Positions 37,838 to 60,054 are shown, counted from the first letter of the stretch. The stretch: 64,000 nt of DNA from Lepidodermella squamata (GCA_047495785.1 JBLDXI010000028.1:1054001-1118000); one strand, 5' to 3'. Translations and numbers: made by a program. Notes: a model not told the origin generated them from the sequence alone.

Positions 37838-40800
37838 TTATGATACGGGACATTTCGCGCTACCACAAGCTGCATGTCGTTCCACTCTACTGCGTCGGTG
37901 ACTCCGCGGTTGCTCTACAACTCGAGCAGCCTGGCCATTGGGCACAACCTCGATGTGCTCAACTTCAGTTGGCGTCGATGCCTCAGAGCGGCTATCCTTA
38001 GCCGGCGAGTGATGCTGGTTGTAGTTCGCAATCTGCGTCGAGCAACGGCTGTTGGGCGTTAGGTTAGATATCGATGAGCTCATCACGCTTTGCGACCTAT
38101 TCTGGTCATCGGCTGTCAAAAATGCGTTCATAAGTTGCGACATTGGAATAGCTTCGCCACTCTCTGCAGCCTGCTTCATCAACTACAAAAAAGACAATAA
38201 ATTATTCAAAATTTAAAAAATTTCAATTTTCAATTTTAATTTTTTTTTTAAATTATGGAAATAACTGTACCTGAGGAATTTTAGGGTCCAGAGAGTTGTC
38301 TGGGATTTTAGACACCCTAGTGGTTATTTCCTGGGGTATAGCCGAGCCAGTTGTCGAAGTTCGAGCCGAAGTACCCTCGGACGGCACCGAGCTGTGTTGA
38401 GCAAGTCGGCGTTTAGTACGAGCCGCAGCCATCTCCTGCTTCTTTGTCCTCCGCCCGATTGACCAAACCGTGAATAAATCAACATTTTCGATAGTTGATA
38501 GCACCTTCATTTTAAAAAATAGTTGAAAATTATTTCTCAAAAATTATTATTACAGGCAATTGAATAGTCACAAGAGGCCGGCTGTCGTAATTGATGGCGA
38601 ATTCGTTCTTTTTCAGTTCATTCACAACATTTTCCGTGACAGTAACAGTATTTGGCTATGAAAATTGAAAATTTTAAATTTAATTTTTTTCAAAATTTAA
38701 TTCATACGATAGCAATTTGAGAAATTCGTTGTGATATAGTGACTGGACGTCCACAGGCCAAAAATCGCGGAATTGTCACGCCGAGACATGTCCCAATAAC
38801 AGGTCCAATGTCGCACGCGACTTGAACATCCGTGACCATAGATTTGCGCATCCGGCGCCCGTTGATAATATTTTGACTCGCCTCGCCAGATCGTGCCGTT
38901 AGGTTCGACATTGAATCGTTGCCAACTTCGGCAGCATCGATTAGTTCTTCGGCGATAAGAACCGCTAAATTGGCAGGCAGGGTGGCGTGAAACGGCAGGC
39001 CGACGATAATTTGGTAATCATTAGCGAAGCTGAGAATCTATGCGCAAAAAAATCATAAAAAACGGGATTTTTTATTTTTTTTAAATCGGAAATTTTGGAT
39101 ATCAATTTTCAATTTTTCAATAATTTTTTAATATTAATTTTAATATTATACAAATGTGATTTTTTTCAAATTTCTCACCTTGCAAACGTTGTATTTGATT
39201 GTTACCGCATCGAATTTCCGGAAAAGAGAATTCAAAGTCATGATAGCTTCCTTGACCATATGCGGCGTTGTGACCGTTTTGAAGTTCAACGCGCACGTGA
39301 TTATGGCTACTTTATTCGAATACTAAGAAAAATAATGAAAATAATTGATAGTAGCCGATGAAATTCATCTTTTACATGAACTCGAGTGAGGTTATCAGGC
39401 GATTTTAGAACAAAACTCGGAATAGCTTCTTCGAGTAGGGCAACGCGTCTTTGGCGGTAGGTATTAGACTCCTGGTTTAGCGAGTCGAGTTTATTGCTAA
39501 TTTTAGCCTCCTGAACCATTAGCGGGTCTTTGCCGATGTCACGATGATGCCGCATGGTGATCAACTCGCGGCTTGAATCCATCATCGATAAATCATGAAT
39601 TTTCAGTCCAAGAAGATTCAGCTCTTTCAAATTATCGATCTTAAAAAATATAAGAAAATTTAAATCAATATTTCAGTGGAAGAAACTTACGATAGGCATG
39701 GCAATGAACATGAGACAGTCCCATTCGTCAAAATGAATCATTTGGCCCCGAAGTCGAAGGTGGATAAATCGCTCAATTCGATCTCCAACTGTGTCGTGAC
39801 TCTGGTGCGTTGAAGGCCTGTGAAGGGCCCCGGGCCCAACTGCCAGATCATCAAAATGACCTTGAATCGGCTGAAGCGAATGAACTTCAAACACGTTGTT
39901 CGCAAAATCCAAAACCTGGAGCGACAAAATTGAAAAAATTCCGAAAATACCGAAAAAACCCGGCAATACCCGGTAATACCCGAATTTCGAGATTTTGAAA
40001 ACTTCTGTTTTCAAGTCATCTCCTGTCTCCTTGGTGCTTGGTGTTTCGGGTATTTTCGGGTATTTTCGGGTGTTTTCGGGTATTGCCGGTATTTTCATGA
40101 TTTTTCAGTAATTTCTTACATTCGCCCACGTGCACGGAATAGCAGGTCGTATCAGCTCGAATACTTCATTAAAATCCCGGCCCACAACCCCAGGCAGAGA
40201 GAAGTTGACGCCACGCCCGGCCGAGACAATTTCAAACTCGCGATTGAGTATAATGTAGAAGGAAATTTTGTCGTACAGCGTTTCAGGGTTCGTTTTCTGC
40301 TGCCTGATTGGCGAATTAATATCGCTAGGTATGCTCGGCAACTTTTGCAGAATTTTCGAATTAGCAACCAGAGCTTGTAATACAGGATTCTCGCCAGGTG
40401 ATGCCAAGGTAGGGGGCGGGGATGGTTCGCGGAGTTGAAGCGGGGCTTGGACCTTCATCGCACGGCGATTGATATAGCCGGAATTATCGAAATCCAACCG
40501 CATTAGGACGGAATATTTGCCGCGGCTATCGATGACTTGCGATTGAATTCCGACTGTGATCGAAATGCCGTAGTAGAGCCGAGCGACTTCAGATAACTGC
40601 CCGGCGACGTAGCCGTGTAAATTGCCCCGAATCGATCGGTAACAAATCGTCATGCCGTTGCAGTCTTCGGTAACAACGGAAAAAGACGGCGCTTTGATTT
40701 TCGGATAGGTCCCTCGGAAGTATTCATGCAAGTTGTCGAGGCCGAGTACGAAATCGCTGAGATTTCGGCCAAGCACGCGGAGAAGCGTTTCGTAGCCGGC

Positions 40801-41473
40801 TTGGTGCGTGTATCGAACGAAAAAATGGCCGAATTGCTCCATGACCTGGTCGAGGCGGAGATTGCACGCGTCGGCCGTGCATTGCGCGAGGCGAACGAGC
40901 AATTTATCACTGTAAAGTTGGTGAATTGAAAATCCAGCTCGGCCGAGCCTGCAAATTTTCAGAGAAAATTATTAGAAAATTATTAGAATTATTAGAAAAA
41001 TTGCAGTAACTTGGAACTAAAGTTTCTTTCAATTAAAGAGAATAAGCGGAAAACTTCAGAATCTTATATTTCGGTACTTCGAATATCTGCTGGAAGTTAG
41101 CGGCCTATTTTCAGCTGCCCACTTCAGTAGAGAAGAAACTATAGGATTAGGGTTGGGATTGGGATTGGGATTGGGATTAGGATTGGGATTGGGATTGGGG
41201 TTAGGTTTAGGATTAGGGTTAGGGTTGGGTATTGACTGCCAACTTCTACAAGCTAACCCGATAGCTAACCATCTTCGATTTTTGCTATGGCAAAGTTACC
41301 CCGCTGCCTACAGTCCCCCAGTTGACGGTATGCTTCGAGACTGATTAAATTTACCCAATTCTGGCATCGATTGCTCCGCTACCAGCCGCTTGGGCCAGCA
41401 CAGTTTGCGCAATATCGGCCGAAAACTTGGACGAAATGAACTCGAGTGCAGCTTGCAGCAATAATCCGTACAT
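37838..41473 (-). CDS. Atypical soluble guanylyl cyclase-like protein A (H-NOX + PAS + coiled coil + degenerate cyclase), ~9 exons
   Basis: MYGLLLQ start at 41473; GLDNLHEY, KAPSF, YRSIR; LRLRGQM; GLKIHDLSMMDSSREL; cyclase-like exons 39322-39179 and 39037-38708. Confidence 0.85.
39940..40096. repeat. Intronic inverted array of ~10-bp units (ataccc(g)gaaa / tttcgggtat)
   Basis: Two tandem arms in opposite orientation around a short spacer; a similar motif pair occurs at ~55070-55135. Confidence 0.6.
41143..41230 (+). repeat. Telomere-variant hexamer tract (TTGGGA/TTAGGA/TTAGGG) in intron 1 of sGC-like A, followed by a MITE family A right-end fragment (to ~41329)
   Basis: ~14 hexamers; ...cccagttgacggta terminus at ~41329. 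Confidence 0.8.
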
Positions 41474-42174
41474 TTTTCACGGTAAAATCGCGCCGTGTTT
41501 AATATTATTTTAGGTAAATATATATATTAAGGTTATTTCAGGTATTTCGGTGATAGTCTGTTTGATTTGTCACAAAATTATAGCCTCATAACAAACAGAC
41601 AGCGTGATTCGTCTCGTGTGTAATTAGCAACTATAGAGAAATTAATTTCGAGGCCCTCGACAATTAATCACCCAGTCGCACTTCGGCGACTTCTAAGCGC
41701 GATTTTCAAAGTCTTCAACGCGCTAATTAAATGCGACAATAATTCCACAGATTGTTTTTTCTATGGAAACCGGCATGAGGAGAGCTGATAAAATCTCTAA
41801 CCGAGGATATAAAATAGATCGCGAAGCCTTTAACAGTTAATATTATTTGATTGAAGTATTTGGCGGTGAAATTGCCATAACGTTATATATTATTTGACAA
41901 TCGTCATGTGATACTTAATGATTCTGAATAAAAGTGGCCGTTCAAAAATAGCCAACCGCTTTGTTGAGCTTTTATTTGATCGAGTATAGTACTCTGTCTT
42001 CTGTCAACCTGTTGTGAACGTAGTGCGAACAAATGAAAAGTGAAGAGAACGGATATTTTGATATCAGCAAAAAAGATTCGGCAGGTTATACTGTTTTACA
42101 GGACTTGAGTAGTATAGCAATACCGGAATATAAAGTCGTTATATAAAATAATTTTTTAATTCATTTAATTCGTG

Positions 42175-42711
42175 GTAAGACTTTTCAGCAGTGACACTTC
42201 AGCAAATGACGGTCAAATCAGCAGTGACTTTTCATCAGTGACACATTGTCAGTAAAAAATCCATAAAAATCAAATTTGTGTATTAATTTAAATAATTCTT
42301 GTAGACAAGTGAGCAGTGTCATTTCAGCAGCGACAAATGAGCTAGTGACACTTCATCAATTTTTATTCATTTATCTCGGGCATTGAACTTGCACTTTTTG
42401 AGCTCAACTTCAATGCAGCGCATAGCCCCCCTGCTGAATACGGCTGAAATTCTGTTGATGAATTTATCTCCGCGAAATGTCACCGCGATAAAAATGATGA
42501 ATTTGGAAAAATTTAGGATAAATTATCAAAAAATCACTGCTGACTGGTCAAATGAGCAGGGACTTTTCATCAGTGACAAATGAGCAGTGACATTTGAGCT
42601 GTGACATTTGCGCAGTGTCTCAAATCATCAGTGTCTCTGATTTGTCACTGATGAAAAGTCCCTGCTCATTTGACCATCATTTGCTGAAATGTCACTGCTG
42701 AAAAGTCGTAC
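42175..42711. mobile_element. MITE with ~70 bp TIRs and internal cagtgaca repeats
   Basis: gacttttcagcagtgacacttcagcaaatgacggtcaaat vs rc of atttgaccatcatttgctgaaatgtcactgctgaaaagtc; TSD not clear. Confidence 0.75.
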
Positions 42712-43178
42712 AACCATTTTTCTTTTATTTTTTTCAAAAAATATTTTATATTATTATATTTTAACGATTTACATTTGATATAACGACGTTTATATTCCGA
42801 TAAACTATTGATAGAGCATCTATCTATACCGTCATCCCCGACATATGATGGTAATGCAACAATATAAACGACTAAGACGTTAAGAAGACAAATTTGGTTG
42901 CCTATCATTTATTCTAGTCAGCTCTGTGTTTATCAGACAAGTAATGCCTATAGAAGCTTCTACACGAAAAACCCTTGATAAGTATAAAAAGAATGAAACC
43001 ACCTCAGTCATCTTCCACTTTATTTCACAATAGGTACACAAAATAGGTATTTGGTTACAATTGAAAGATCAGAGTGAAAGGACATAAGCAGAAAGAACGA
43101 GATTGCTTGCGCCTACCGGTTGATATTAAGGAACAAAGTATTAGTAATAAATGGATGACGTTGTGTTTCGAAGCATAA

Positions 43179-44040
43179 TTATGGACTGTGCTTCTCGTTC
43201 TCAGTTGGTTCGCGAGTCTTGGTGCCTTCAAACAAGATGACGGGACTCTCCCCTTTTGCTCGCAACAGTCGGTACAACAGACGCTTCTGTAAAACAGGCA
43301 AATCACCTGGAATGACTGGTCTAAAATCGTTTTTGGTTCGAAGGAGCTGAATAAGGTGGGAAGTTTGAGATGAATCACCGTAGGTTTCCACTAGCCTGCC
43401 TTGAGTTGGAGATCGCTCATCTGGAGCATTAACGAGCAATCGTTCTCGCCAATGCTCATCAAAAACAGGACATGTATCATAATGGTTCAGAGCAGCATTG
43501 ACACTCGGAATCTGAACTCCGCAACCCAGCCGCCCATGCCATTCTTGGAACTGCTCAGCGAAGTTTTCAATCAATTTTCGACAACCCATTACAGCAGCAA
43601 GTGAGGCCGCATTATCCGGGTCGACTTCACCTACGATACCTAAAAAATACAGATGTAAATCAATGTATTGGAAATAACAAATAAATAGACAAACCTTGTG
43701 ACGTTAGTGTTGTAAGTGGAGACAGCGCCTTCACAATGATTGGAGAATCGTAGCTATTAACAAGACCATCCGGCTGACCAGCGTAAATTGTTGTCACCAG
43801 TTGATTACGAGGCAGCGCTACGGCGTCAGAAGGGCGAATGAAGATATTGATCAAGCCAAGCGATACATGTCCAAGTTCAGGATGAAGCTTCTTCTGAATG
43901 GCTTTGATAAGATTATAGACGTTTGCATTATCCGGAACTTCTACTTTAATGGGAAAACCAGCTGCAAATTTCACCCAGAATAAAGGCATACTTGCTAACA
44001 CACCAAAGAATGCAAAGATTCCTAGACGCAATAAAATCAT
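43179..44040 (-). CDS. Crinkler (CRN)-like protein: signal peptide, ubiquitin-like CRN N-terminal domain, unknown C-terminal domain; exons 44040-43695, 43639-43179
   Basis: MILLRLGIFAFFGVLAS then FWVKF..PIKVEVPDNANVYNLIKAIQKKL.PEL.HV.L..I.I ... NSYDSPIIVKA; a phase-1 intron joins the two track ORFs. Confidence 0.6.
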
Positions 44041-44061
44041 TATATTTCTCACTTAGTGAGT

Positions 44062-44680
44062 TACCGTCAAACGGGGCGACTTAGCCAGTCGGGGTCACTT
44101 TGCCGCGGAAAAATGGGGCGACTTTCGCATAGCCATATCTCAGAGATATCGAGGTAAAGACCCCTTGAGTGGGATACCGCTGGAAAGCCCAAGAAAAGAC
44201 CAACTGGAATGGCATGAAACTACTTCAGCCTCTCACAATACCTGGTGATTAAACACAGGTAAAGTTGAGCGAAAAATACAGTTTTCGGCAGTATTTAGAT
44301 GACTCCAAAGTCAACCAGGTGTGATCAAAATAAAAAAACCATGTCATTTTCGAGCAGCCCTCGACACAAGCTATCCAGCGGCACCCCGCTTTAGAGGTAT
44401 CCACCTTTCCAACAGCGGTTCGAGTTAGGGCAAAGCCACCCCATCTGCATCTAAACCGTACACAGGGTCACTTTGCGCCGTTCCACGTCAGTTTTTAAAA
44501 TAAATACGATTCAAACAGTTCCACAACGTATATAATTGAATTCTCCGTCATCAGGGCGTATTGACACGATACTTGACATATATCATGCTTGAGAAAATGA
44601 CATCGTGTGTGATCCAAAGTCGATCGCAAAATCCTATGGCAATGTCCCCCCACTGGCTAAAGTCGCCCCGTTTGACGGTA
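44062..44680. mobile_element. MITE family A copy 3 (most complete)
   Basis: TA-ccgtcaaacggggcgacttagccagt ... actggctaaagtcgccccgtttgacgg-TA. Confidence 0.88.
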
Positions 44681-45437
44681 TATGAATCAGAAATTCACAA
44701 AACTTGGTAAATACCAGTCATTTACGACGGTGAATCCGACAAAATTACTCTTGAGGTCATGGGACGCGCCCTACCTGCTCAGGTAAGCCACCTTGCCTGG
44801 ATTTTTCGATATACACCTATCCAGGTGGTGCTGATGAAGAAATAAAAAGCACCATCGTAATCAGCTTCATTTGTTACATTATATAACAAATTCTCACGTT
44901 TATTATGTGCTGCTGTCAGATATAACAAATGGGGTCCCAAATCGATGCAGCTTTTTTACATGGAAAAAACTGAACTTAACAGCATAAGTTGGCAGCACGC
45001 CAACGGAAGGTGATACGAAGGTAATTTTTGTTTCTATCAACTAGTATTGGTCCGTAAAAATCCATAACAAATGATGAGACTTCCAGGGTAAGCGGTTATT
45101 GCTGATGAAAACACGCTGCTAGGTTCCGTTGGGTCTTTATTCGGTTTACTGTTGGACTTTTTCAGACGTGAAGGCTATCGTTATCGATAAATATCTGGTG
45201 AATTTTTCGTCACTCTTGGCGGTCTCTTTTCCAACAGATGGTCTGATTAAGAGCAGCAAAGCTATCGGTGTCATAATATGAGCTTTCAGCAATAATAAAC
45301 TAAAATGAATTTTTATCACAAATAACTTATGGTGATTGATCGTTAATCAAAATTTCCGAACATCTGCCCAATAAAGTACCTATGAATAACGAAAGCAAGT
45401 TTCCTCATTTTAAACAGCTGAAATTATAAGCAGTAAA

Positions 45438-48400
45438 ATGATCATGAGTTTACATGTTACTCTGGTGATTTTGAGCCACCTTTCTCACCTTACCTGCGAT
45501 TCTGTCTCTCCAGATCCTGTACTGCTAGTACTCTACAACAAACAATTCGGACCTCACAGCGTCATCAAAGGGCCGATTCTCGCCTACACATTCAGCGGAT
45601 ATGCCGGCGTCATGCGGCAAGCTGGCCCCTTTGGGTACCTGGACACCGCTTATTCCCTGACACAAATAAGCTCCTACACGAGTGATAGTATAATAGCGGA
45701 CTTCCCAGATATTGCGACATATTATATTCGCGACAGTTATTTCAAGTCAGCCGAGTTGACAATTACATTCTTCTTCTATAGTGATACTGAAGGTTTGAAA
45801 AGCGGAGGGCTAATGAAGTTCTCCGACGAATGGCACACGATTTACGTTGGGTTGAATGCATTTTATAGAACGTTAGAAATAGGAGCGCGCCAGGCTAATG
45901 ATGACTTAGGCACGAATACAGTGAAAACAAATTTGCCGCGCGAACTTCTCCAGACTAGAAAATGGCACTTCATTAGCATTGTTAGGATGTCGCTAAAAAG
46001 TTTGGTAGTCTATCTAGCGACAGAGCCGACTTATGAACTGAGAAATATTGCGGTTCTCGATCTGAGATTAATTCACTATGGCGGCACGTCTTATGTTAAT
46101 CGACAGTTAATGATAGGCTATGCTCCCTATAGCATTATGGGAACAGGAGTCAGTGGCGTAACTCAACGTGAAGGATTCGCATGCCTGGCGTGTCACAATA
46201 CAACTCTCCCGGAAAACATCCTTCCGTCGTTGATAGAAAACTGCCGAAACATCAGCGAACATACCGCAAAGCAGCAGCTTGGTATATGATTCTCAAGGCG
46301 TCTAAACTCTTTCAATTTATAAATGCTATAGTTAAAGTTGTTGGGACTTACACGTATCCGTCTATTGAATGGACAAATCTGCTATTGGATCCTTCCAGCG
46401 ACATGTTTCGAAAAGCAATGTCAAACGTAGTTTCCCAGGTTGTTTCTGACCGTTACCCTTCTGACCTGCCATTTTGATTCTTAAACGTCAAACTTATTCT
46501 AGATAAATCAGCAGTTGTTGAATACATCTTTCGGAAATGTCCGAACTTCAGTCTATCGGTTTTCAATGGGACCTGCTGCGACAGTCGAAGCTTTGTACAT
46601 GTCTTACATCCAGCGTTCATACAAATTCAACGCAGAGCTGAGCGAAACAGACGCCATCAAAGAACTCAATCGATTTGTTTCGAACAACACTCTGACTATA
46701 TCATCGGTTTCACTAGGTAGTTTTTCCAGGGCTGCAAAATCTGCAGAACTTCCCGCGCAGTGATTTTAATTTCCCGATAAACCCGCTCGCTCGCTGCGCT
46801 CGCTCGCGGAATGTGCCTTTATAACTTTTCCTTATCGCTTATATTTCTGTGGGTTATTTCCTGTAAAGCCTCGCGCGGCGGAAAAATTGTAAGAAACATC
46901 AGTATTTTGGAGTGAGAAAATGTCTGAAAATACTTGATTCGGCACATTTTTAAATTTTTATTAACATTTTTAGGCCTAAATTGGTGGCCAGATTTCGCAT
47001 TTCATACGGCTTGATACTCGTATAATTCACATATTTAGGGTAACCAAAAACTTGTGGCTAAATATCGTAATTACCCAAATATTCTTAATTACGCAGATAA
47101 ACCAAGTTCTTCAATTTCAGGAATTTCAAAAAACAAATTAGATATTCGGATTCAGCGCAAAAAGTTACCCCACCCTGCAAATTTGCGCACAGTTATCGTG
47201 AAAATTGGTTGAGAAATAGGCGGAAACAAATTTCAATTTTTGCACGTGTGCGCGCGCGTGTGCGTGCGTGTGTGCTCCACAAAAATTCGCTCACTCGCAC
47301 TCGCCCGCTCCACTTCACTTTTCAAAGCAGTTGTGCGCTGTTGTGCGCGCGCGCTCGCTGATTTGTGCGCGCACACAGTTACAAGCAAACTTTCAGTCCG
47401 CATTTCTCCCTCATTTTCAAACATAGCTGCGCGCAAATTGGCAGGAATGCCCAACTTTTTACGCTGAATCGGAATATCTAATTTGTTTTTTGAAATTTCT
47501 AACCGTTATTATCACCGATTTCGCGTTAGTTAAACAGAAGTTATTATTGGAATTAGATAGGAAAGTCATTCGTGAATTGCTAATTAGTTCAATCACTTAA
47601 TTATTGAAATAAATTATCGGTGGAAGATTAATTACTTGTTAGATTTCCCGCTGATTACCCTTATTTCCCGCTGATTTTTGGCGATTTCTGAGCATTTTCA
47701 CATCTCTATTTCCCAAAAATTTCCCGCTGCGCGTAAAAATTTCCCGCGCAGCCACTGCGCCATTTTTGCAGATTTTGCACCCCTGAGTTTTTCAATAGTG
47801 TTATTGTTGTTGCTTTTATAGAGAAACATGATTTAAAGAAGTCACCTCTTGTTAAGCTAACTCTTTCGCATTAGCTAAAATTGAATGCTGAAGAAAGCAT
47901 ATTACAGATAGTATAATCTCCTGACAGGAATCGAAATGCCAAGATCTTTTGCTTTGGTCGGCTTCTGGCCGCTTTCTTACGCTTATTTATTGAGCGACTT
48001 GGGTCCGCGACGTCTTGTCAACTCTTACACGAGCGATTCTGACTTTGCAACACCCGCTTTATTCCAAGAGTGGACTGGCAGATGGTTCAGAAAAGAGCTT
48101 TTCTCTGTTGCTGACCTCAAGTACCCTATTAGAGGAATGGAAGGCTTCGCGGTTTCATTCTATTTTCTCCAAAGTCAGATTGGGTCAGTATTGACAGGAA
48201 TCTTGGAGATCAAACCCAACGTACTTCATATTGGTTATAAGTATCCTGATGCGTTGCTCGTTTCAGTTACCAACATGAAGGAACCGATCATTGTACCGGG
48301 TATTATCCGTATTTCTGAATGGGTTTTCATTGGGCTCGTATTTTCGAACAAACCAAAAACAACGTGGCTGAGAATTTATAATAATCACCATTACGTTTTC

Positions 48401-50642
48401 GAAGTGCAAAATGCACCCGTCGAAGTTGCATCAACTTGGTGGCTGAATTCTACGGGATTGACTGTTGGGTTTTCATCCAAATTTTCGCTAGGCACTTCGA
48501 TCGGCGCCGATGCAATCGCCGGACTAACAATTTATGCAGCCGATTTAGCTGCTGATGAGTTAAATCAAGTGCAGGAAGCTTTTCGACTAGTCGTTTCTAG
48601 GAAATGTTGCGGTGTCGGGAATATCCAGCCCTTAGCGCCGATAGTTACTAGGCCAACAGCAGTGCTCCCCGAGCAGGTTCCATTCATCAAGGTCTTTCCT
48701 GGAAATGACATATCGACGTGCATTGGAGCCATCGTTGATGACGAGATAATTTTAACAACTGCAACGTGTAAAGGCGCAATGCTTTCAGCTCTCAACTATT
48801 CCCTTGTCGATGAGTTACTCGTCGCCCGTTACTCGAAAGAGGATTCTTCCAAAATTCAACCTGTTTGTTTGCCAACATGCTGTGATCAGAACATAACGTG
48901 GAGCGAATCGGTTCAAGTTGTCGGCTTGCCCGAGACGAGCTCGAAAAAGTACGTATATGTTACCGGAATTGTTCTTTCGCAGGCAGAATGCTCAGCGAGA
49001 GTGAATGCGTCTTCCGACGAAAACAGCATTTGCTTTTACACAAAAATATTGCTTGAGCTAAATTGCGACTTCCTCGATGGGGCTGTGCTGTTACGTTCAA
49101 TCAATGGGGACAGCGTGACGGGCAAAACAAGACGCTACGTTTTGGCAAGATTAATCCTTAACTCTTAAAATTGCCAGTTTAACGATTTATTATAGGCTGG
49201 AATTTACGTCAAAGCTCTAAACGCGGATTGCAAACCGGGAAAACCTATTATTTTCAAGAATATCTTCGCGAAAATAGAGCACATCAGGCGATCAGCATCG
49301 TGCCTCAGCATGTCTCAAGGCCAACAATGTCCAATGACCTACCGGACTGTACCGACATTGCCGCCATCTTTCACGAGGACCACGAAAGCTGCAAGTTTTG
49401 AAGAAAGCACTACACCCTATTTGACCATTATTGAAAGCGGACAATGTAAGGCCTAAAGATAATTTATACTAGTAAAATTATTCCAATTATTTCTTCGTCA
49501 AATAGCGCCTATGATTGAAATCATAATCAGTGTAGTAGCTGCCGCCGGTCTTGTTGTCGCATCCTCTGTATTCTGCTACAAGAGGAGAGCGAGACAACTT
49601 GTAAAAAAGCTAGCAGGGTTAAAATCAGCGACATCATCTTCAGTCGCACCATCAAACTACATCGTTGCTGTAGGTGATCTCGCAAGTCTTCTTAGGGACC
49701 TCACCGAGTCCGAGGAACTGATAAGTGAGTTTGAAGGAATCGGCTTGAATCCAGAATTTGTGGAAGTTCTAGAGCTAGTTGGGGAGGGCCAATTTGGATC
49801 CGTGCATAAAGGTTTACTACAACAGGGCGATAACGAACAGCGTCTAGAAATAGCTTTGAAATGTACAAAAACATCAGCTGAAGTTGGAGATCTCGTCGCT
49901 TTTCTAAAAGAAGCAGTAATAATGAAGGACTTTCAACACGACAACGTTTTGCCGCTGATTGGCGTTGCTGCTGTCTACAACAAGCCCAGCATTGTTGTAC
50001 CATTCATGGCAAATGGCAGTCTTAACCGATACTTGAGGATGAATACTGATGCCAGTGGCGGATCATCTCCTGAGACACTCATCGACTATTGTCTCCAGGT
50101 GTGCAAGGGCATGGTGTATTTATCGTCGAAAAATTGCCTGCATCGTGACCTGGCGTGTCGCAATGTTCTCGTCTCCGACGATCGAGTGCTGAAGATCTGC
50201 GATTTCGGCATGTCACGCAAGGTTGACAGTGAGCGGTTGTACTACAAACTGACTAACAATGGCCAACTTATGATTCCGGTCCGGTGGTATCCTCCAGAAG
50301 CAATTCACAAGTTCACCTTCGAGCCGAAAAGTGATGTTTGGTCCTTCGGCGTTACGATGTGGGAAATATTTTCAGGTAAGCCTTGCCTTTTACTGTACCT
50401 TTTATATCTAGAGGATGCTCTTTCTTCGAGCAGAATGCAAGAGCGTTCCGTACGAAGACATCGACACTGCAGAGGTCATACTTCGGATTGTTCACGGTCT
50501 GCGCCTCAGTCAGCCTGAGAAGTGTCCAACTGCAATTTATGATCATATCATGACCAAGTGCTGGGCAAGCGAGCCACGAGACAGGCCTACCTTCGGCGAG
50601 ATTGAAGGGCTCATCGGGGATCGGGGATCTGTCGTTGCCTGA
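45438..50642 (+). CDS. Receptor tyrosine kinase, Met-like kinase domain, with LamG-SEA-LamG-inactive trypsin-like ectodomain; exons 45438-46281, 46332-46438, 46503-46716, 47928-49144, 49196-49445, 49506-50375, 50434-50642
   Basis: Signal peptide; WHFISIV and WVFIGLV LamG-like; LLDPSSDMF SEA-like; CIGAIVDDEIILTTATC, IQPVCLP, LAGI protease-like; TM then KRRAR; GEGQFG, IALK, IMKDFQH, HRDLACRN, DFG, PVRWYPPE. Confidence 0.82.
46727..47785. mobile_element. hAT-type non-autonomous element in RTK intron 3
   Basis: 8-bp TSD agtttttc (46719-46726, 47786-47793); TIR cagggctgcaaaatctgca / tgcagattttgcacccctg; internal ~46 bp inverted repeat 47121-47166 / 47453-47499. Confidence 0.9.
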
Positions 50643-50815
50643 TAACTATATCCAAGCTTTATTTTAGATCAAAACACTTGATTTATTGTTAACCATTATT
50701 TCTGAGCCATACTTCATCGTCACAGTTTATGTTACAAGTGATGATTAGCCGTGATACATTAAGAATAAGTAATTAGGGCAAATTTAGGACAAAAACGACA
50801 GCGAACAGAAAAATA

Positions 50816-53800
50816 TCACGATATTGTACACGAAGCATTGCGTGGCATGCATTGCCCTTTTCCGTTATTATTGACAACAGGGACACAGCCCAGAGTGGTT
50901 TGCCCGTCTGTTCGGCTGTTATTGGACGCCAGACGAGCCTGAGCCGCGTCAACATCCAAAAACTCAACTACGCCCAATTCACTCAAACTCTCCACCCCGG
51001 TTTTGAACGGGCAAGTCCCACTAAGGGCTGGGGCGAATTTCGCCAGCTCGCCCCCGTCGAAACTAGGCCGCCGACTCGATAGCGAGTCGTCTGGGGTATC
51101 TGAGCTGCGGACAGGGTTTTCTAGTGTATCTTTAGCCTCATCCTCCTCTATGACTGGGGTTTCCTCATCGATTATAACTTCATCATCGAATTCCACCGTT
51201 TCAAGCATTGACCTATGCCGAGAGGTCACAACATCTACGTTTTCGTCATCGTCATCTTCATTTTCGAAGGTGACCTTACTACCGGAAGCTGCGCTACTTT
51301 TGCTGAGCCGCGTTTCTTTCTCCAGCCGGCGTCTCTCGATTTTTTGCATGAAATCTAACAGGCCGGTGTTGTCTAGCGGTAGGGCTGTTTGGCGGCCGCT
51401 GATTAGCTGTTGATCTGATGTGGTTGATAGTAGCTGGGCTGTTCGACTTACCGGGCCAGAGTAGGCCGAATCACTCTCTGCGCCAAAAACTGACGAATCG
51501 CTATCCAATTGCTGGCCGGGATATCGGACAAGTTTAAACAGCTCGACACTTTTACGAACCTGAAAAACATAGCCAAAAAGGTGATTGCTGATTGCACACG
51601 TATGACGGACCAAGTATGACACGCAAATGCAATCTTGAGGTATAAGATGCCATTAGAATATTTTACTTCACGACAGGGAATTGAGAATTTCGGCTTCGCC
51701 AGTATTTTCGGGGCCTTTCGTGAGCTAAGACATAGATGTAGAAATGAGGTCTTTTAATTCCACAGCGATGATTAGATCCCAGGAGGGCTCTTATGGTTTG
51801 TTTTTTGCTAGCCCTGCTTTTTTCCATGTGATTTGTAGATCTACGTCACATTATTTGAAAATGTTCGGAATTTGTCACATTCGGAGCTCTCAATGACAAA
51901 CGTTCTGAAATTAACGTACCAAATATTCGGCACTTTGAATTTGCGAAAAATCGAAATTGTTCGCCGAATCGGTGGTGGCCAATACAACTTTCGCGTTCTC
52001 AGTTATCGCGATCGAATTCGTCTAAAACGCGAGAAAAAGCACGAAAATTCAATGAACTCGCGAAATGAGCTCACGCAAAGCCTCGCATAATTACGTGTTA
52101 GTTTAGCTAATCTTCTCATACCTGGCCGATAGTAGCAGCTAAATCGCGAGTGCATCGCAGTGATTCTCCGGCTATGCAATAGTAGTTCAAATTGCCGATC
52201 GAAGCTATCGAAGACGCCCCCTCGCCGCAATCGATAACTTGAAAATCCGTTTTGCAGATTAAAAAAAATCTTACAAATTTCCATACCAATTTGAAATTTC
52301 CCAGCTGGTATAGGTTTTTCATTCGAGGCTCGGCTCGATCCACTGGCTGGGGTCATATTTCCAAGATGAATACCTGATGGAGGCTTGTTGGCGCTAAAAA
52401 TCGCTTTAAATTCAGCCGAATGAACTAATTCGATCGCAGCTAAAATTATCGAATTAACAGGCTGTTTTTGCTCAAACGGCAGTCCGGCCGCTAGAGTCAC
52501 TTCATCAGCGAGCGAGGGTGTCTGAGAAAATTGAAAATTGAAACAAAACCGACGTGTCATCAAGTCGGGCGATAATAATTGACGCACTTTTGTCAAGTTG
52601 AATTTGTCACAAATTTTGTCGAGCTTCGCCGCGAAGCAATTCAGATGAGTGACATGTTGCTGAATCGACGATGCGTGGTTACTGCCGCTATTATTATCCC
52701 CGTCATCGAGGCGAGAAAAGTCGAAAATTATCGCCATAATTGCAACGAAGCCTTTGGTGACCTGTGTAAATAGCATATAGTTGAAATGTCCTGAAACATG
52801 TGTTCAAAATCAGCTGATCAATCAATGAAAAAAAAATTTTTGATTTTCAAATTTTCAAATTCTAGTATTTTTTTTAATTTTCAAATTAATAATTCAATTT
52901 AATTAATATATCTTTTCTTCTACAAAATTACTTCGACATTTATTGATTTTGGGTTATCCGAAACTTCTGAATAGCGAAGAACCAAATGCCTGGGGACAAC
53001 GGTCTGAAGTAAGCTTAGCCGTTCGCCCTGAAGTTGGAAAGCTCGTTCGAGGCAAAAGTCAATGTCAGAGTCCTTCAGAAAAAACAAAGGAAAATTTGAA
53101 GCAAATCAATAATATTGGGTTAATAAGTACAAATTTTGCCAATTCTTTACGATTTGAAGACAAATTTTTCGACAGTTGCCGGTGATAAGCAACACTGGTG
53201 ACAAAACGCGACGCGTCATTTTTCGACAAATCCGAGCCATTCAAACCGATATCGCGTAAATTGTTCATTTCCTCGAATCTGACAAAGCCAAATATGAGAT
53301 ATTTTAAGGAATAATTTTGTCCTTACAGTGGGACGCCATTGAATATCAGACAATTCGCGCTCTTGAAGAAGAAAACTTGGCCGCGGAGGCGTAAAATAAC
53401 AGACTCTTGATTTTTGGATTCACCCTTGTACGGAACTTGGAATTCGATAGTGAAAATGTTGTGCCCATTTCCTCCGATCTATTATAAGTAGAAAATGGCT
53501 TAAAATGGAAGACAATAGCTGAAAGCTGAAATATGACCAGCTTCAAATTTCACAAAAATTCAAATGAAATAACTAATTTTGTCCTGTTTACCTCAGCCCA
53601 AGACCAGGATGATCGTTTAGGTAAGGCTATTTTGCAAACAGATAGCAAACTTGATCCAAGAACCCCAGGTAACAGCTTCATCAGCGATTTGCCTATCGAA
53701 ACAATTTCCAGCTCGCTCTCGACAAACGCGATATGAAACGGCATCAAATCATCGAAAATGCAACTCGCCGATAGTTGCATTTTCTTCATCGAATCAACGT

Positions 53801-54440
53801 AGCACCGCGTTTTTTTGCGCTTCACATATTGGTCTAAATTATCGAAAATCAGCGTAATTATCGTTTCGATAAAATCATCATCGGAGGTTTCTTGCTCGAT
53901 TTTCGACTCGATCTTAATTCCGTAATATTTTTCAGCTACGGTGTTCATTAGCCCGGTCGCGAGGCAACTAAATCCAGTTCGGTTGGTTTTATACGAAATT
54001 TTCATGCCTTCCGGAGTTTGTTCTAAAACCGTGAATGACGGCGGTTGAATTCGCGGGAAACTGTGGCGTAAATATTCGTGTAGACAGTCGATATTTCTTA
54101 GAAAATCGGCGAAATCCCGGCCGAAAAAGTCGAGAAGCGGCTTGAAACCGGCGTCATTTGTTAGCAAATGCAGGAAATAATGGCTGACTTTCTGCAAAAC
54201 TTCACCCGGCGATAAGTTGGTGATGAGGCAAACGGCTTGAATCAGGCAATTCATAACATCATCCGGGTAGGATTGATAAATCGTAAAGCCGCGTTTGAAA
54301 ATTTGCCGAAATCGCGGCATCGAACTGTTCGACTCTCGCCGGTCAAGGCTATCGGCTGTATCGATAATTTCATCGACCACATCTGGCGGGAAATTTTCCG
54401 TTATATATTGCAATAAAGACTGCAACACAAGGCCATACAT
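50816..54440 (-). CDS. Atypical soluble guanylyl cyclase-like protein B (H-NOX + PAS + coiled coil + degenerate cyclase + long acidic tail), ~9 exons; last exon 51559-50816
   Basis: MYGLVLQ start at 54440; NIDCLHEY, QPPSF, YKTNR; LRLRGQV; GLNGSDLSKNDASR; cyclase-like HLNCFAAKLDKIC, TPSLADEV, YYCIAGESL; several intron positions shared with gene A. Confidence 0.8.
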
Positions 54441-54674
54441 GGTTGATAAAAAAAAATTCAGTGTTGGGTCAGCCAACGAAAAAACACTGATAAAACTGAA
54501 GCCATTTGAGGCTCGAGACAGGATTAAACACCCCCTCATAAATCGGGTGCAAATCACTTGTTTTATTCGCAATGAAAACAAAAAAATCGTAATAAAAAAA
54601 GAAATCATTTGACTTTAATTAACAGTGAATGAATGAATCGATCGATAAATTTTGAAATATATGAGGTCGGATAT

Positions 54675-57388
54675 TTACTTAAAAGATAAATTTGTAATGT
54701 CACGGCTTGGAATGTTTTGGCACCATTTCGAACATTCAGGACTAGACAAGAAGGCCGGAGTGATTGTAGGAGGGACTGCGGCTTCGTTTTCGAGCGATAA
54801 ACAAGCAGCTCGGAGGCCGAGGCGAACGGCTTGATCGGCATCCTTCGCCAGGCCAGATACCGTCGAACCAATTACCGTCCCAATGAAACTAAGAAAAAAT
54901 CAAAAAATTAAAATTATTAAAATGGGACAAAGAAAATAAACGGAAATGGGATCAGAAAATAAAAAAATAAGAGGCAATTCTCATGGCCACAAAAATTCCA
55001 AATGCCTTGAGAATGGTAGTCAGGTATAAAACTTTTCAATGGGAATGTAAAAAACCGAAAATTGGCCCAACCGGGTAAAATACCGAAAATTACCGAACAA
55101 TTGACAATCGGGTTTTTCCGGGTTTTCTGCGGTACATTTTTATTTTGAAATTGTGAACTAACCAATCACCAGCTCCTGATACGCTAACAATTTTCAGGCC
55201 CTGGCCAGGCGGCTCAGCTGAGTAGAAAATTGCTGAAAACTTGTCACTTTTTCCACTTTCAGGCTTCGACCAAGGCCTCATCGGCAACGACTGATACGCA
55301 TCGCAGCTTCGAATTACAATCACGCCATGATGGCCCAATTTCAAGAACAAATTCGGCGGAAAATTCGGCTTTGACAACAGTTCTTTTCCAGATTTTGCCA
55401 AAATCATCAGAATTTCGTCGCTTAGCGGTGCGTTTCCAACAACAGCATCTCTGCAGTTAGCCGGCGATGTTTTCCCGGTAAAAAATTCGAATAATTGTAA
55501 AAACTCCTCAAAGTTCGGGCTAATCGATGCGAGGCAGTCAAAAATTGCGTGATGACTAGATTTCACGTCGAATTGCGCTCCAATGGCTTGAAATGGCCTT
55601 GTTGCTTTATAAATATCAGTACATTCCAAATAGAGCGGAACTTTGTGCTTCAAACAAATTTCCATCATTTTAGGAAAGACTTTGAAGGGCAAATTTCCGT
55701 CGATTACAGCTAACGGCGCTTTCGAAATCGATTCCTCGTGAGCGGCCAAATCTTCGGCGTCAAATTTTTCCATAGCAATAAAATCGCCTATTCCAACCAG
55801 GTATTGGCCAGTATTCGCCAGAGTTCCAACGTAAGACGGCGAATAAACGCCTGTTTTTTCTTTATCAAGCCATTTCACGCCTGCTACGTCAAGATGTTGC
55901 GGCGTGAGCGATACAATCAATTTCCCAACCGAGTCGTTTGATAGAACCGAAACAAGTAGAGGCCGCTTTTCGGTCTCATTTTCTTTCGCCTGGGTTTCGC
56001 CGATAACTCGAGAAATGCAGTCGGCAACATTTCTACCGACCCCTCCAGCTGACAAGAAAACTCGGCCTTGTTCTGTAGCTTGCGTATGGCCCGGGGTTGG
56101 GTCCAAAAATTTTCCATACGCGTCTAGAACTGAACCGCCGACAATAACAGGCCGGGTTGATGCTTCTGATTTTCGGGGGGGCGAGCAATTTCGATGACCA
56201 GTTTGCATTTTAGACAGGCCAACAGCGATTTGACAACCGATGTTAGTGTTGTTCAAGACCAGCGCGAGATCTATAGTTTAATATCATCATATTTTTTTAA
56301 TAATTCTAAGATTTGTACAGACTTGCTTTCACTGTTTCGCCTTTGCTAGCTTTAGCGATTTCAGACAGTAAAAATGGCGTTGTAGCTTTCCCTGTTATAG
56401 ATTGTTCCGCAGCTTTTTTCAAAGCCTCTTGAATTCGCTTTTCCATCACTGCGACTGAAATAGCAGCACTTTCCGGGATTGGGCAGGCTAACAACACTCC
56501 ACTGGGAGGTGGATCCATCGAAAAGTGAGCATCTACGATACATGATTATTTCAATTGCGTCAAAATTTGAATATTTACTTATAAGTTTCACGGCATCTTC
56601 ACTCGAGCCAAGACGGAGCGGTACCTTAACGCCGGAAGAAACTGAGTGGAAAGCCGGGAAAAACCCATCCGGATGAAAAGTAGCCACAGGAACGCCGAGT
56701 GTTTCCAAATATTCCAGCGTGGCTGGGATGTCGAGAATTGACTTCGACCCCGCACAAACCACGACAACAGGCGTCCGGCCTAGTTCTGTTAAATCCGAAC
56801 TGATATCGAAACTTTCTTGCCAACTACGGTGAACGCCGCCAATGCCACCGGTTACGAATAGTTTAATACCAGCCATATGAGCTGCCCACATTGTTAGCGA
56901 GACGGTAGAACCTCCACTGAGTTTCTTTGAAACGGCTTTTGCAATATCAAGCCGAGCGACTTTCTCTATTTCTGATTTGCCGGAGGCTAGAAATTCCAGC
57001 TCCTCCCGATTTAGCCCTTGAAATTTAAGATTCAGTGTTATGAATGACCAAGTTCGTCTTGAGAAAGTACCTATTACAAGCTTGCCATCAACAAATCCAA
57101 TCGGCGCCGGTGTAACGTCAAATTTTTTGCAAATCTGGCGGATGTCATCGTTTAAGCTGAAATTTCGTCGGAATTAATTCAGTTATGGAGCAGTATATTC
57201 TCTCACTTCAAATTCAACGGCTTTGGGAGACCGTGCGTTACAATTGCTGTCTCGAATGCAACAACCGGCTTGTTCGCCGATACAGCCTCTATAACACTAG
57301 GTCGAATGTCGAGCCAATGCGGCCGCTTAGCAGTAGACAGCATTCGCTTGGAAATCATTCGACAATGCGGAGATAGGCCGAGAAACAT
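54675..57388 (-). CDS. Bifunctional pseudouridine-5'-phosphate glycosidase / pseudouridine kinase (PsuG-PfkB fusion), ~6 exons
   Basis: PVVAFETAIVTHGLP, FVTGGIGGVHR, DISSDLTELGRTP, KSILDIPATLEYLET, GKATTPFLL; GGVGRNVA, VSVSGAGDCF. Confidence 0.92.
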
Positions 57389-59372: not shown

Positions 59373-60054
59373 GCGACGACCGCAGATTTCAAAAATGAGC
59401 CGGCCAAATGAGCTTGCGGTGCGACTTATTGATAACAGCAACCAGCCAATCAATCAATAATAATTGTCATGTACATAAAGGGGAACAAAATGACAACAGA
59501 TTAATACAATCAATAAATCGAAATAGGTTCCCAATAGTGATTATTTTCTTTAATCAATTTTCTTCTTTTTCTTGTAAAATACAAATTTCACAATGTGATT
59601 ATCGGCAGGCAATGAACTTGGTGTGTACTTCCGAAATCAGATTCAAGGTGTCTTTACCGGAAATCTCCGATTCTTTACTGTACAGTAGCCAGTCGAGCAA
59701 ACTGTCGAGCCAGTCGAGAGAAGATTGCAACACTTTACATACGGAATTCACATTAGGCCATCGCACCTTGTTAGTAGCAGTGGCTTTCCTAGCTGCTCGC
59801 CCAATTCTCGCAAGTTTGTCTCTCGCACGTAGACACATTCGGACGTATAATGGACGTTCTTGCACTTTTCCGTCTCTTGCTTGCACTTGTTCAGCTCGGT
59901 GTTGATTGCCACTATTAGCGCGTTCAGCAACTCATGCGTTTCGCTAGCTGCTATGACCGCAGCGTTGTGGAATACGGCTTTCAGCGACGTCAACCCTTTG
60001 TTCCTGGTACCAGTTGCGTTGCGGGCGTTTCGCTTCGAACTTGCTCATCATTCG

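What the first reader, a model, noticed from the sequence alone, without database searches (positions are those of the whole stretch)
37838..54440. Pair of H-NOX gas-sensor pseudo-cyclases: heme pockets intact, catalytic sites dead in both
Seen: two same-strand paralogs (41473-37838 and 54440-50816) with full sGC architecture and open reading frames. Both keep the proximal His (DNLHEY, DCLHEY) and the heme propionate motif (YRSIR, YKTNR). Spliced cyclase domains versus the class III consensus: FSDIVGF -> ITCALNF (A) and MAIIFDF (B); KVETIGDAY -> KILSFANDY (A) and KTPSLADEV (B); RYCLFGDTVNTASR -> RFLACGRPVTISQR (A) and YYCIAGESLRCTRD (B). Established: sGC alpha subunits supply the two metal Asp and beta subunits supply Glu/Cys/Asn/Arg, so one partner normally complements the other. 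Inference: even an A/B heterodimer lacks the first Asp, the Glu and the Asn, so this may be a cGMP-independent gas-sensing module or a dominant-negative regulator of real sGCs, signalling through the long novel C-terminal tails.
Basis: partly seen in the sequence, partly recalled or inferred. Interest (0 to 1): 0.88.

Follow-up and report, generated by a model that had tools for sequence, protein, structure and literature searches.

The report
Heme gas sensors with dead cyclase domains
Two intact genes in this animal genome encode relatives of the nitric-oxide/oxygen receptor soluble guanylyl cyclase that keep the heme-sensing half and a lipid-anchor signal but have lost the residues needed to make cGMP, and the same loss is found in their counterparts in another, distant animal, so they probably sense gas without making the usual messenger.

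Summary
Genes A (41473-37838) and B (54440-50816), both on the minus strand, splice cleanly into 9 GT-AG exons each (863 and 857 aa). Pfam confirms H-NOX and HNOBA in both. The proximal His and the Y-x-S/T-x-R heme motif align to human sGC beta-1.

The cyclase domains are homologous to class III cyclases but very divergent (A 49.9 bits, B 15-20 bits on a profile built from 21 canonical sGCs). At the seven key columns canonical sGCs read D-E-D-R-C-N-R. A reads C-L-N-R-L-T-R and B reads I(or D)-P-D-Y-C-R-D.

New here:
- A-type and B-type counterparts exist in metagenomic contigs of a distant animal. They also lack the base-binding Glu and the catalytic Asn.
- The five proteins form one well-supported clade apart from 44 other sGC homologues.
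- H-NOX is their best-conserved domain and the cyclase domain the worst, the reverse of canonical sGCs.
- All five end in a CaaX box with X = Ser.
- B shows one spliced RNA joint and purifying selection in exon 1 (pN/pS about 0.1).

They are not pseudogenes. I read them as a conserved family of prenylated, non-catalytic H-NOX pseudo-cyclases whose output is unknown. The loss of the first Asp in B depends on which alignment is used. The scan noted a third such gene elsewhere in this genome (s1-374297); I did not test it.

The parts
37838..41473 (-). Gene A, 9 exons, 863 aa. Exons: 41473-41355, 40948-40120, 39915-39691, 39639-39376, 39322-39179, 39037-38708, 38655-38554, 38504-38271, 38182-37838.
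   Evidence: Manual and scripted splicing. All 8 introns are GT..AG, the frame is open and the length is a multiple of 3. The model is collinear with orthologue L001.
40474..41473 (-). A H-NOX domain (aa 1-198, interrupted by the 406-nt intron 1). Proximal His114; heme-propionate motif Y143-S145-R147.
   Evidence: Pfam HNOB 99.4 bits on exon 2. Residue numbers. 55% identical to L001 over this domain.
39694..40266 (-). A HNOBA (PAS-like) domain, aa 268-390.
   Evidence: Pfam HNOBA hits on three successive exons, covering profile positions 6-65, 63-138 and 140-212.
39376..39639 (-). A coiled-coil/signalling-helix exon (aa 392-479).
   Evidence: Covered by the C-terminal part of the Pfam HNOBA profile. 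Aligns to the coiled-coil region of canonical sGCs.
38448..39322 (-). A pseudo-cyclase domain (aa 480-690, exons 5-8). Key columns: Cys489 (first metal Asp), Leu529 (Glu), Asn533 (second metal Asp), Arg618, Leu620 (Cys), Thr627 (Asn), Arg631.
   Evidence: 49.9 bits on my own profile of 21 canonical sGC cyclase domains. hhalign of the A-type alignment against the canonical one gives 98.6%, E 6e-15. Column read-out.
37838..38447 (-). A C-terminal tail (aa 691-863), Ser/Thr/Pro-rich, ending in the CaaX box CPVS (codons 37852-37841) and the stop codon.
   Evidence: Translation. All five family members end C-a-a-S.
50816..54440 (-). Gene B, 9 exons, 857 aa. Exons: 54440-53592, 53478-53327, 53278-53131, 53072-52932, 52761-52588, 52521-52374, 52237-52122, 52021-51920, 51559-50816.
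   Evidence: All introns are GT..AG. Four to six intron positions are shared with A, depending on how near-matches are counted, and three with L007. The exon 8/9 junction reads straight through within a single exon of L007.
53850..54440 (-). B H-NOX domain (aa 1-197). Proximal His121; Y150-T152-R154.
   Evidence: Pfam HNOB 114.7 bits. Residue-by-residue alignment to human beta-1, PDB 6jt0_B.
53327..53762 (-). B HNOBA/PAS-like domain (aa ~227-333, with intron 1).
   Evidence: Pfam HNOBA 29.7 bits on exon 1. Alignment.
53279..53326 (-). B intron 2 (48 nt), seen spliced out in run X1.
   Evidence: read laying joint 53278/53327, skipped ends CT..AC on the + strand, which is GT..AG on the minus strand. 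It matches the boundaries I had predicted beforehand from the sequence read (scripted model). It rests on one contig with only 20 letters on its short side.
52932..53278 (-). B coiled-coil exons 3-4 (aa 334-430).
   Evidence: Alignment to the canonical coiled-coil region.
51500..52761 (-). B pseudo-cyclase domain (aa 431-~630, exons 5-9). Key columns: Ile441 or Asp444 (first metal Asp, alignment-dependent), Pro490 (Glu), Asp494 (second metal Asp, kept), Tyr556 (Arg), Cys558 (kept), Arg565 (Asn), Asp569 (Arg).
   Evidence: 15.4-20 bits on the canonical profile and 45.4 bits on the A-type profile, against 3.7 or less for shuffles. Columns.
50816..51499 (-). B acidic, Ser-rich tail with the motif RSMLETVEF (aa 726-734), ending in the CaaX box CTIS (50830-50819) and the stop codon.
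   Evidence: L007's tail has RSMLDTVEF and ends CIIS. Run X1 covers 51064-51627.

Best explanation
A and B are functional, ancient paralogues in a distinct clade of soluble-guanylyl-cyclase homologues. Selection has kept four things in this clade: the H-NOX heme sensor, the PAS-like HNOBA domain, the coiled coil and a C-terminal CaaX prenylation signal. The class III cyclase domain has lost its catalytic residues. In A-types it is still a recognisable fold; in B-types it is barely recognisable. The proteins are therefore heme-based gas sensors (NO, O2 or CO) that cannot make cGMP as A/A, B/B or A/B dimers.

Inferred mechanism: the protein is farnesylated and sits on a membrane. It dimerises through the PAS, coiled-coil and pseudo-cyclase domains, as sGCs do. 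Gas binding at the heme moves the coiled coil and the dead catalytic module. The output is a change in protein-protein contacts. Either the protein titrates or silences catalytically competent sGC subunits (any heterodimer with a dead subunit has no complete site), or it recruits partners through the pseudo-site or the conserved tail.

Shown here: architecture, heme residues, loss of catalytic residues, conservation of both types across species, one clade, CaaX. Inferred: heme binding, prenylation, dimerisation, the nature of the output.
For: - Gene models: 9 clean GT-AG exons each. Intron positions are shared between A, B and the metagenomic orthologues.
- Sensor half: HNOB and HNOBA pass Pfam's cut-offs. 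The heme ligands align to beta-1 His105 and Y135/S137/R139.
- Key columns: canonical hits read D/K-E-D-R-C-N-R. A reads C-L-N-R-L-T-R and B reads I/D-P-D-Y-C-R-D.
- Orthologues: L001 is A-type (42% identical to A). L003-L006 carry a second A-like type. L007/L008 carry a full-length B-type of 750 aa; its shorter allele L002 is 35% identical to B. All of them lack the Glu and the Asn. All three A-types have Cys in the first-Asp column. The L001 cyclase exon passes Pfam Guanylate_cyc (45.9 bits against a cut-off of 21.9).
- Tree: on the N-terminal 470-480 residues the five form one clade (SH-aLRT 99), with the A-types (98) and B-types (99) inside it, apart from 44 other sGC homologues.
- Inverted constraint: A against L001 is 55% identical in H-NOX and 30% in the cyclase domain. 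B against L007 is 39% and 18%. Canonical P0008 against P0018 is 53% and 65%.
- Selection: B exon 1 differs from DNA run X2 at 13 synonymous and 5 non-synonymous sites, pN/pS about 0.11. L007 against L008 shows 5 synonymous and 0 non-synonymous differences. L003 against L004-L006 shows 2-3 synonymous and 0 non-synonymous differences per comparison.
- RNA: one spliced RNA joint lies exactly at B intron 2.
- Lipid anchor: the proteins end CPVS, CTIS, CKVS, CAQS and CIIS.
Against: - No structure could be predicted, because spliced proteins cannot be passed by reference. Residue equivalence therefore rests on sequence alignment.
- For B's first Asp two aligners disagree. B keeps the second metal Asp and the Cys, so B paired with an unseen beta-like partner is not excluded.
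- No RNA evidence for A. For B there is one short-sided joint, and X1 also covers some intron.
- Differences inside the cyclase domains are too few to measure selection there: 3 synonymous and 0 non-synonymous in the relatives, and 2 non-synonymous and 0 synonymous among those listed for B.
- The clade unites long branches (B 1.0, L007 1.9), so attraction is possible.
- Heme binding, prenylation and dimerisation are untested.
Confidence: 0.7

Rival explanations
1. Half-site subunits of an active enzyme. B, and perhaps A, is a very divergent alpha-like (C1-like) subunit. It supplies the metal-binding Asp pair to a canonical beta-like sGC subunit encoded elsewhere in the genome, and that heterodimer makes cGMP.
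For: B keeps Asp494 in the second metal column. It has a conserved Asp444 ('FD', also in L007) that hhalign places in the first metal column. Beta-like subunits that lack the first Asp (K-E-D-R-C-N-R) are common among the hits. sGC has a single active site, formed at the alpha/beta interface from residues of both subunits (PMC8196705).
Against: The B-type orthologue L007 has Asn in the second metal column, so the pair is not conserved. B lacks the Arg of the 'PRY' motif (Tyr556). MAFFT and the shared intron position favour Ile441 in the first-Asp column. The cyclase domain is the least conserved structured domain (18% between B and L007), which is not expected of a catalytic subunit. A has neither Asp.
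Confidence: 0.12
2. Dominant-negative regulators. A and B exist mainly to heterodimerise with catalytically competent sGC subunits and switch them off, possibly in a gas-dependent way.
For: Each cyclase site needs residues from both chains (PMC8196705), so a subunit that supplies neither half leaves no complete site in a heterodimer. The dimerisation modules (HNOBA, coiled coil) are conserved. From memory, not checked here: a splice form of mammalian alpha-2 with an insertion in the catalytic domain acts in this way.
Against: A simple inhibitor would not need its heme pocket to be the best-conserved part, nor a conserved CaaX box and tail motif. No canonical partner has been seen in this window, and the scan notes so far name none.
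Confidence: 0.3
3. Decaying genes. One or both are pseudogenes, or on the way to becoming pseudogenes, and the dead catalytic sites are part of general decay.
For: The cyclase domains are extremely divergent: B scores 15-20 bits and L007 about 0-6 bits. There is no RNA evidence for A. The two differences listed in B's cyclase exons are both non-synonymous.
Against: The ORFs of 863 and 857 codons are open across 8 canonical introns each. Both types are kept intact in a species only 35-42% identical. B exon 1 shows a synonymous excess, and so do the relatives' alleles. There is a spliced RNA joint. The C-terminal CaaX is conserved, which requires the whole frame to be read.
Confidence: 0.04

Closest known systems
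Atypical (O2-sensing) soluble guanylyl cyclases of the Gyc-88E / GCY-31 / beta-2 kind
   Same: Same domain order: H-NOX, HNOBA, coiled coil, class III cyclase, long tail. These are the nearest named relatives: proteins annotated 'soluble guanylate cyclase 88E' from tardigrades, a beetle and a snail (29-34% identity to the A-type P0003), and 'gcy-31-like' from a scallop. They also end in a CaaX box (CVLL, CVVI, CLIL in P0008, P0018, P0037).
   Different: Those proteins keep the full D-E-D-R-C-N-R set, and their cyclase domain is their best-conserved part. A and B keep only 2-3 of the 7 residues each, and both lack the Glu and the Asn. A and B fall outside them in a separate clade. Their CaaX ends in Ser (farnesyl type, from general knowledge) rather than Leu or Ile.
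Heterodimeric sGC alpha-1/beta-1 and its pseudosymmetric site
   Same: Degenerate half-sites are normal in this family. One interface site is catalytic and the other is a non-catalytic nucleotide-binding site proposed to act in regulation (PMC8196705). The heme ligands of B align to those of beta-1.
   Different: In alpha/beta one complete site remains. In any combination of A and B both sites are incomplete.
Other degenerate H-NOX cyclase homologues in public data (Seison nebaliae KAI3385820.1, Rotaria sp. CAF4671083.1, metagenomic P0009/P0062)
   Same: H-NOX proteins whose cyclase domains have lost several key residues (R-N-D-Q-F-E-L, x-x-x-Q-C-R-Q, E-D-N-Q-D-I-Q). Where they are named at all, they are annotated only as hypothetical proteins.
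   Different: They sit in other clades of the tree, so the losses are independent. Their cyclase domains are mostly less diverged (about 49-140 bits, against 15-50 here).
Bacterial stand-alone H-NOX sensors
   Same: They work alike in principle: a heme H-NOX domain that signals through protein-protein contacts and not by making a nucleotide itself (abstract of PMC8738867).
   Different: Those are single-domain proteins of about 190 aa that partner with kinases or diguanylate cyclases. A and B keep the whole eukaryotic sGC scaffold.

Membership tests
Soluble guanylyl cyclase family (homology) | N-terminal H-NOX domain with the proximal His and the Y-x-S-x-R motif | tested here: met
   Pfam HNOB scores 99 and 115 bits. 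A has His114 and Y143/S145/R147. B has His121 and Y150/T152/R154 (Ser replaced by Thr). B's residues are aligned to 6jt0_B.
Soluble guanylyl cyclase family (homology) | HNOBA (PAS-like) domain followed by a coiled coil | tested here: met
   Pfam HNOBA scores above its cut-off on the exons of both genes. The region is collinear with canonical sGCs.
Soluble guanylyl cyclase family (homology) | C-terminal class III cyclase-homology domain | tested here: met
   A: 49.9 bits on a canonical profile; hhalign 98.6%. B: 15-20 bits on the canonical profile and 45 bits on the A-type profile, against 5 or less for shuffles. Pfam itself hits only the orthologue's exon (L001, 45.9 bits); it hits no single exon of A or B.
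Catalytically competent class III guanylyl cyclase | Two metal-binding Asp residues (FSD..., ...GD) | tested here: not met
   A has Cys489 and Asn533. B has Ile441 (or Asp444, depending on the aligner) and Asp494. The orthologues read C/D, C/N and V(or D)/N. No member has both securely.
Catalytically competent class III guanylyl cyclase | Guanine-recognising Glu and Cys | tested here: not met
   The Glu column holds L, F, H/F, P or a gap/Ala in all five. Cys is kept only in B and L003.
Catalytically competent class III guanylyl cyclase | Transition-state Asn and Arg (...TVN..SR) | tested here: not met
   The Asn column holds T, S, K, R and I in the five. Arg is kept only in A (Arg631).
Gyc-88E/beta-2-like atypical sGC subfamily | Groups with named 88E/gcy-31-like proteins in a tree | tested here: inconclusive
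   These are the nearest named relatives by score. In the tree, however, A and B form their own clade, separated from all 44 others by branches with support 99. The tree is midpoint-rooted and contains long branches.
CaaX-prenylated proteins | Cys at position -4 from the C-terminus, followed by a-a-X | tested here: met
   CPVS (A), CTIS (B), CKVS (last ORF of L001), CAQS (L003), CIIS (L007). Actual prenylation cannot be tested with these tools.

The most novel reading that the evidence does not exclude
An undescribed class of membrane-anchored animal heme gas sensors. The whole sGC scaffold has been re-used for cGMP-independent signalling: the dead cyclase dimer and the conserved tail serve as a gas-switched protein-interaction module. 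The class has been kept as at least two, probably three, paralogous types since before two distant animal lineages split.
Probability: 0.35. Interest if true: 0.75.

Novelty: new variant of a known kind. Interest (0 to 1): 0.6.

Why it matters
To my knowledge, every described animal H-NOX domain is wired to an active guanylyl-cyclase output. The paper searches here found no H-NOX pseudo-cyclase. This family keeps the sensor under selection while the catalytic residues have been lost in every member recovered here from at least two divergent species. That gives a natural test of whether the sGC scaffold can signal without cGMP, or whether it acts as a built-in inhibitor of active subunits. It also shows that similar degenerate sGC homologues sit in public genomes labelled only 'hypothetical'. 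Counts of 'sGC genes' in comparative work on NO/O2 signalling may therefore include non-enzymes.

Tried and rejected
1. An exon for B at 51840 ('VDLQITWKK', which resembles A's exon-8 start). No GT-AG pair joins it in frame without hitting a stop. Orthologue L007 reads straight through the junction I adopted (exon 8 at 51920 joined to exon 9 at 51559), so I treated the stretch as intronic.
2. Pfam on single cyclase exons of A and B. Nothing was found, even at E 10.
3. Word-indexed search with the B-type P0001. It found only itself. Longer contigs were reached through cluster members instead.
4. Naming the organism. Beta-catenin hits (57% to a metagenomic protein, about 45% to vertebrates and insects), two Atlas searches and a paper search for the sample codes gave no taxon.
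5. Literature on H-NOX pseudo-cyclases and on CaaX or dominant-negative sGCs. Nothing specific is held in the library.
6. dN/dS across species. Not attempted, because at 30-55% protein identity synonymous sites are saturated. I used near-identical alleles and strains instead, and these give few differences.
7. Structure prediction and fold search. Not run. The cyclase domains are split over 4-5 exons, spliced proteins have no reference, and I did not type long sequences.
8. RNA check of A. Only one read-laying run was allowed and I spent it on B. The index shows no RNA run holding A.
Full report
**What is there**

The window is animal DNA with short GT-AG introns of roughly 50-60 nt. On the minus strand, two open-reading-frame trails start with the H-NOX signature MYGL at 41473 (gene A) and 54440 (gene B). 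I spliced both by hand and checked the result by script.

A has 9 exons and encodes 863 aa, ending at the stop at 37838-37840. B has 9 exons and encodes 857 aa, ending at the stop at 50816-50818. All sixteen introns are GT..AG.

The only doubtful junction was B's last one. A stretch in the 360-nt intron 8 (51850-51794) reads CDVDLQITWKK and resembles A's exon-8 start. No in-frame GT-AG path uses it. The B-type orthologue L007 reads straight through the junction I adopted within one exon.

Four to six intron positions are common to A and B, depending on how near-matches are counted. Three of B's intron positions, including one not found in A, recur in L007.

- Every quoted motif is present in the spliced proteins.
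- Pfam finds HNOB (99 and 115 bits) and HNOBA in both genes.
- A search against the PDB aligns B to human sGC beta-1 (6jt0_B). His121 falls on the proximal His105, and Y150/T152/R154 fall on Y135/S137/R139. A has His114 and Y143/S145/R147.
- No single cyclase exon of A or B gives a Pfam Guanylate_cyc hit, even at E 10.
- I therefore built a profile from the cyclase domains of 21 canonical sGC homologues returned by the exhaustive representative search. A scores 49.9 bits and B 15.4 bits. One hundred shuffles score 5 bits or less.
- hhalign of the A-type alignment against the canonical alignment gives 98.6% probability.
- B scores 45 bits on a profile of the A-type domains, against 3.7 or less for shuffles.

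Both genes therefore carry a true, very divergent class III cyclase-homology domain.

**Catalytic residues**

I read out seven columns: first metal Asp, base Glu, second metal Asp, the Arg of 'PRY', base Cys, Asn, Arg. The canonical hits show D (or K/G/Y in beta-like subunits)-E-D-R-C-N-R.

| Protein | Residues at the seven columns |
|---|---|
| A | Cys489, Leu529, Asn533, Arg618, Leu620, Thr627, Arg631 |
| B | Ile441, Pro490, Asp494, Tyr556, Cys558, Arg565, Asp569 |

sGC has one active site at the subunit interface, built from residues of both chains, and a degenerate pseudosymmetric site (PMC8196705). Neither A nor B has the Glu or the Asn, and neither has a secure Asp pair. No A/A, B/B or A/B dimer can therefore form a canonical site.

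hhalign places it in that column.

**Relatives**

The exhaustive H-NOX search of 1.84 billion representatives found nothing closer than 37% identity. Three hits are kin:

- P0003 and P0017 are A-like.
- P0001 is B-like.

All come from ENA metagenome assemblies. Cluster members led to longer contigs. I spliced the following:

- L001, A-type, 42% identical to A.
- L003, a second A-like type of 823 aa.
- L007, a full-length B-type of 750 aa. Its shorter allele L002 is 35% identical to B by tblastn.

Reciprocal scores pair A with L001 and B with L002/L007. The A/B duplication is therefore older than the split between the two animals.

All three relatives also lack the Glu and the Asn. All three A-types carry Cys in the first-Asp column (IIT/SC). 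The second-Asp column alternates between D and N. The L001 cyclase exon passes Pfam Guanylate_cyc (45.9 bits against a cut-off of 21.9), which ties the family to the Pfam domain.

A maximum-likelihood tree of the N-terminal 470-480 residues puts the five in one clade (SH-aLRT 99). A-types (98) and B-types (99) lie inside it, apart from 44 other sGC homologues. The B-type branches are long, so attraction cannot be excluded.

**Are they alive?**

- Both ORFs are intact across eight introns each.
- Both types are intact in a species this distant.
- Run X1 shows a joint that skips 53279-53326 with GT..AG ends on the minus strand. This is exactly my intron 2 of B. X1 also covers B's exons and its 3' exon.
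- The joint rests on one contig with only 20 letters on its short side, and X1 also covers some intron. The expression evidence is therefore modest.
- No RNA run in the index holds A.
- Against DNA run X2, B exon 1 differs at 13 synonymous and 5 non-synonymous sites, pN/pS about 0.11.
- Near-identical alleles of the relatives differ only at synonymous or intronic sites: 5 synonymous and 0 non-synonymous for L007 against L008, and 2-3 synonymous and 0 non-synonymous per comparison for L003 against L004-L006.
- Inside the cyclase domains the counts are too small to judge.

**Pattern of constraint**

| Pair | H-NOX identity | Cyclase-domain identity |
|---|---|---|
| P0008 / P0018 (canonical) | 53% | 65% |
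| A / L001 | 55% | 30% |
| B / L007 | 39% | 18% |

In canonical pairs the cyclase domain is the best conserved. In this family the order is reversed. B and L007 are 27% identical in the tail, which is more than in the cyclase domain. L007's cyclase region is barely detectable by any of my profiles. The sensor is what selection keeps. The catalytic module is relaxed, and more so in B-types.

**Tails**

The tails are 170-250 aa long and low in complexity, but they are not featureless. A, B, L003 and L007 end CPVS, CTIS, CAQS and CIIS, and the last ORF on L001 ends CKVS. Canonical relatives end CVLL, CVVI and CLIL. A C-terminal CaaX box is therefore inherited from the parent subfamily and retained. 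B and L007 also share the motif RSML(E/D)TVEF.

**Interpretation**

The best reading is a conserved family of prenylated, non-catalytic H-NOX pseudo-cyclases (confidence 0.7). How they signal is inferred. One option is that they silence active subunits by heterodimerisation. The other is gas-switched protein contacts through the dead dimer and the tail.

A residual alternative (0.12) is that B serves as an alpha-like metal-binding half for an unseen partner. The Asn at the second-Asp column in L007 argues against this. Pseudogenes are unlikely (0.04).

**Comparison and novelty**

The nearest named relatives are 'soluble guanylate cyclase 88E' and 'gcy-31-like' proteins. Independent degenerate H-NOX cyclase homologues exist in rotifers (Seison, Rotaria) and in metagenomes, annotated at most as hypothetical proteins. 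The paper searches returned no description of an H-NOX pseudo-cyclase.

I rate this a new variant of a known kind. The scan's own notes list a third 'H-NOX sensor attached to a pseudo-cyclase' elsewhere in this genome (s1-374297). I did not test it. It fits the three or more types seen in the metagenomic animal.

**Not done**

- No structure prediction, because spliced proteins have no reference.
- The organism is not identified.
- No read-tool refusals occurred, so no stretch had to be avoided.

Noticed in passing
window ~41145-41235 (minus strand, intron 1 of gene A): An interstitial telomere-like array. (CCCTAA)n decays into (CCCAAT)n repeats, which read as Pro-Asn or Gly-Leu runs in ORF lists.
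   Followed up: no
window 58323-59453 and 60421-61551 (minus): Two tandem 376-aa ORFs with MOSC_N and MOSC domains (mARC-like molybdoenzymes). From memory, mARC enzymes can reduce nitrite to NO. The proximity to the heme sensors may be coincidence.
   Followed up: partly
window 22625-23794, 29054-30226, 36281-37336 (plus): Three paralogous GDPD (glycerophosphodiester phosphodiesterase) ORFs in a row, upstream of gene A.
   Followed up: partly
window 51794-51850 (minus, inside B intron 8): A stop-bounded 19-codon stretch, CDVDLQITWKKAGLAKNKP, resembles the start of A's exon 8 (ENVDLFTVWSIGRRTKKQ). It cannot be spliced in frame. It may be the relic of an older exon, or chance.
   Followed up: partly
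L003 10001-12606; L009 338-1168: The metagenomic animal (or animals) carries at least three or four H-NOX paralogues of this family: P0003, P0017, P0001, and P0023, which is 52% identical to A. All come from the same ENA samples.
   Followed up: partly
proteins P0078 (Seison nebaliae KAI3385820.1), P0121 (Rotaria sp. CAF4671083.1), P0009/P0062: Other H-NOX cyclase homologues with degenerate catalytic columns (R-N-D-Q-F-E-L, x-x-x-Q-C-R-Q, E-D-N-Q-D-I-Q). They fall in separate clades of the tree, which suggests repeated loss of catalysis in sGC homologues.
   Followed up: partly
window 50500-54700 against run X2: The DNA run differs from the window by about 2% in B's exons and by more in the introns and upstream, including indels. 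Some variants are at half depth, so this is a heterozygous or strain-divergent source.
   Followed up: partly
window 14024-15823 (minus): The beta-catenin-like ORF is only about 45% identical to vertebrate and insect catenins. Its best hits are a metagenomic protein (57%) and a protein flagged as contamination in a sturgeon assembly (43%). The source organism is poorly sampled.
   Followed up: no
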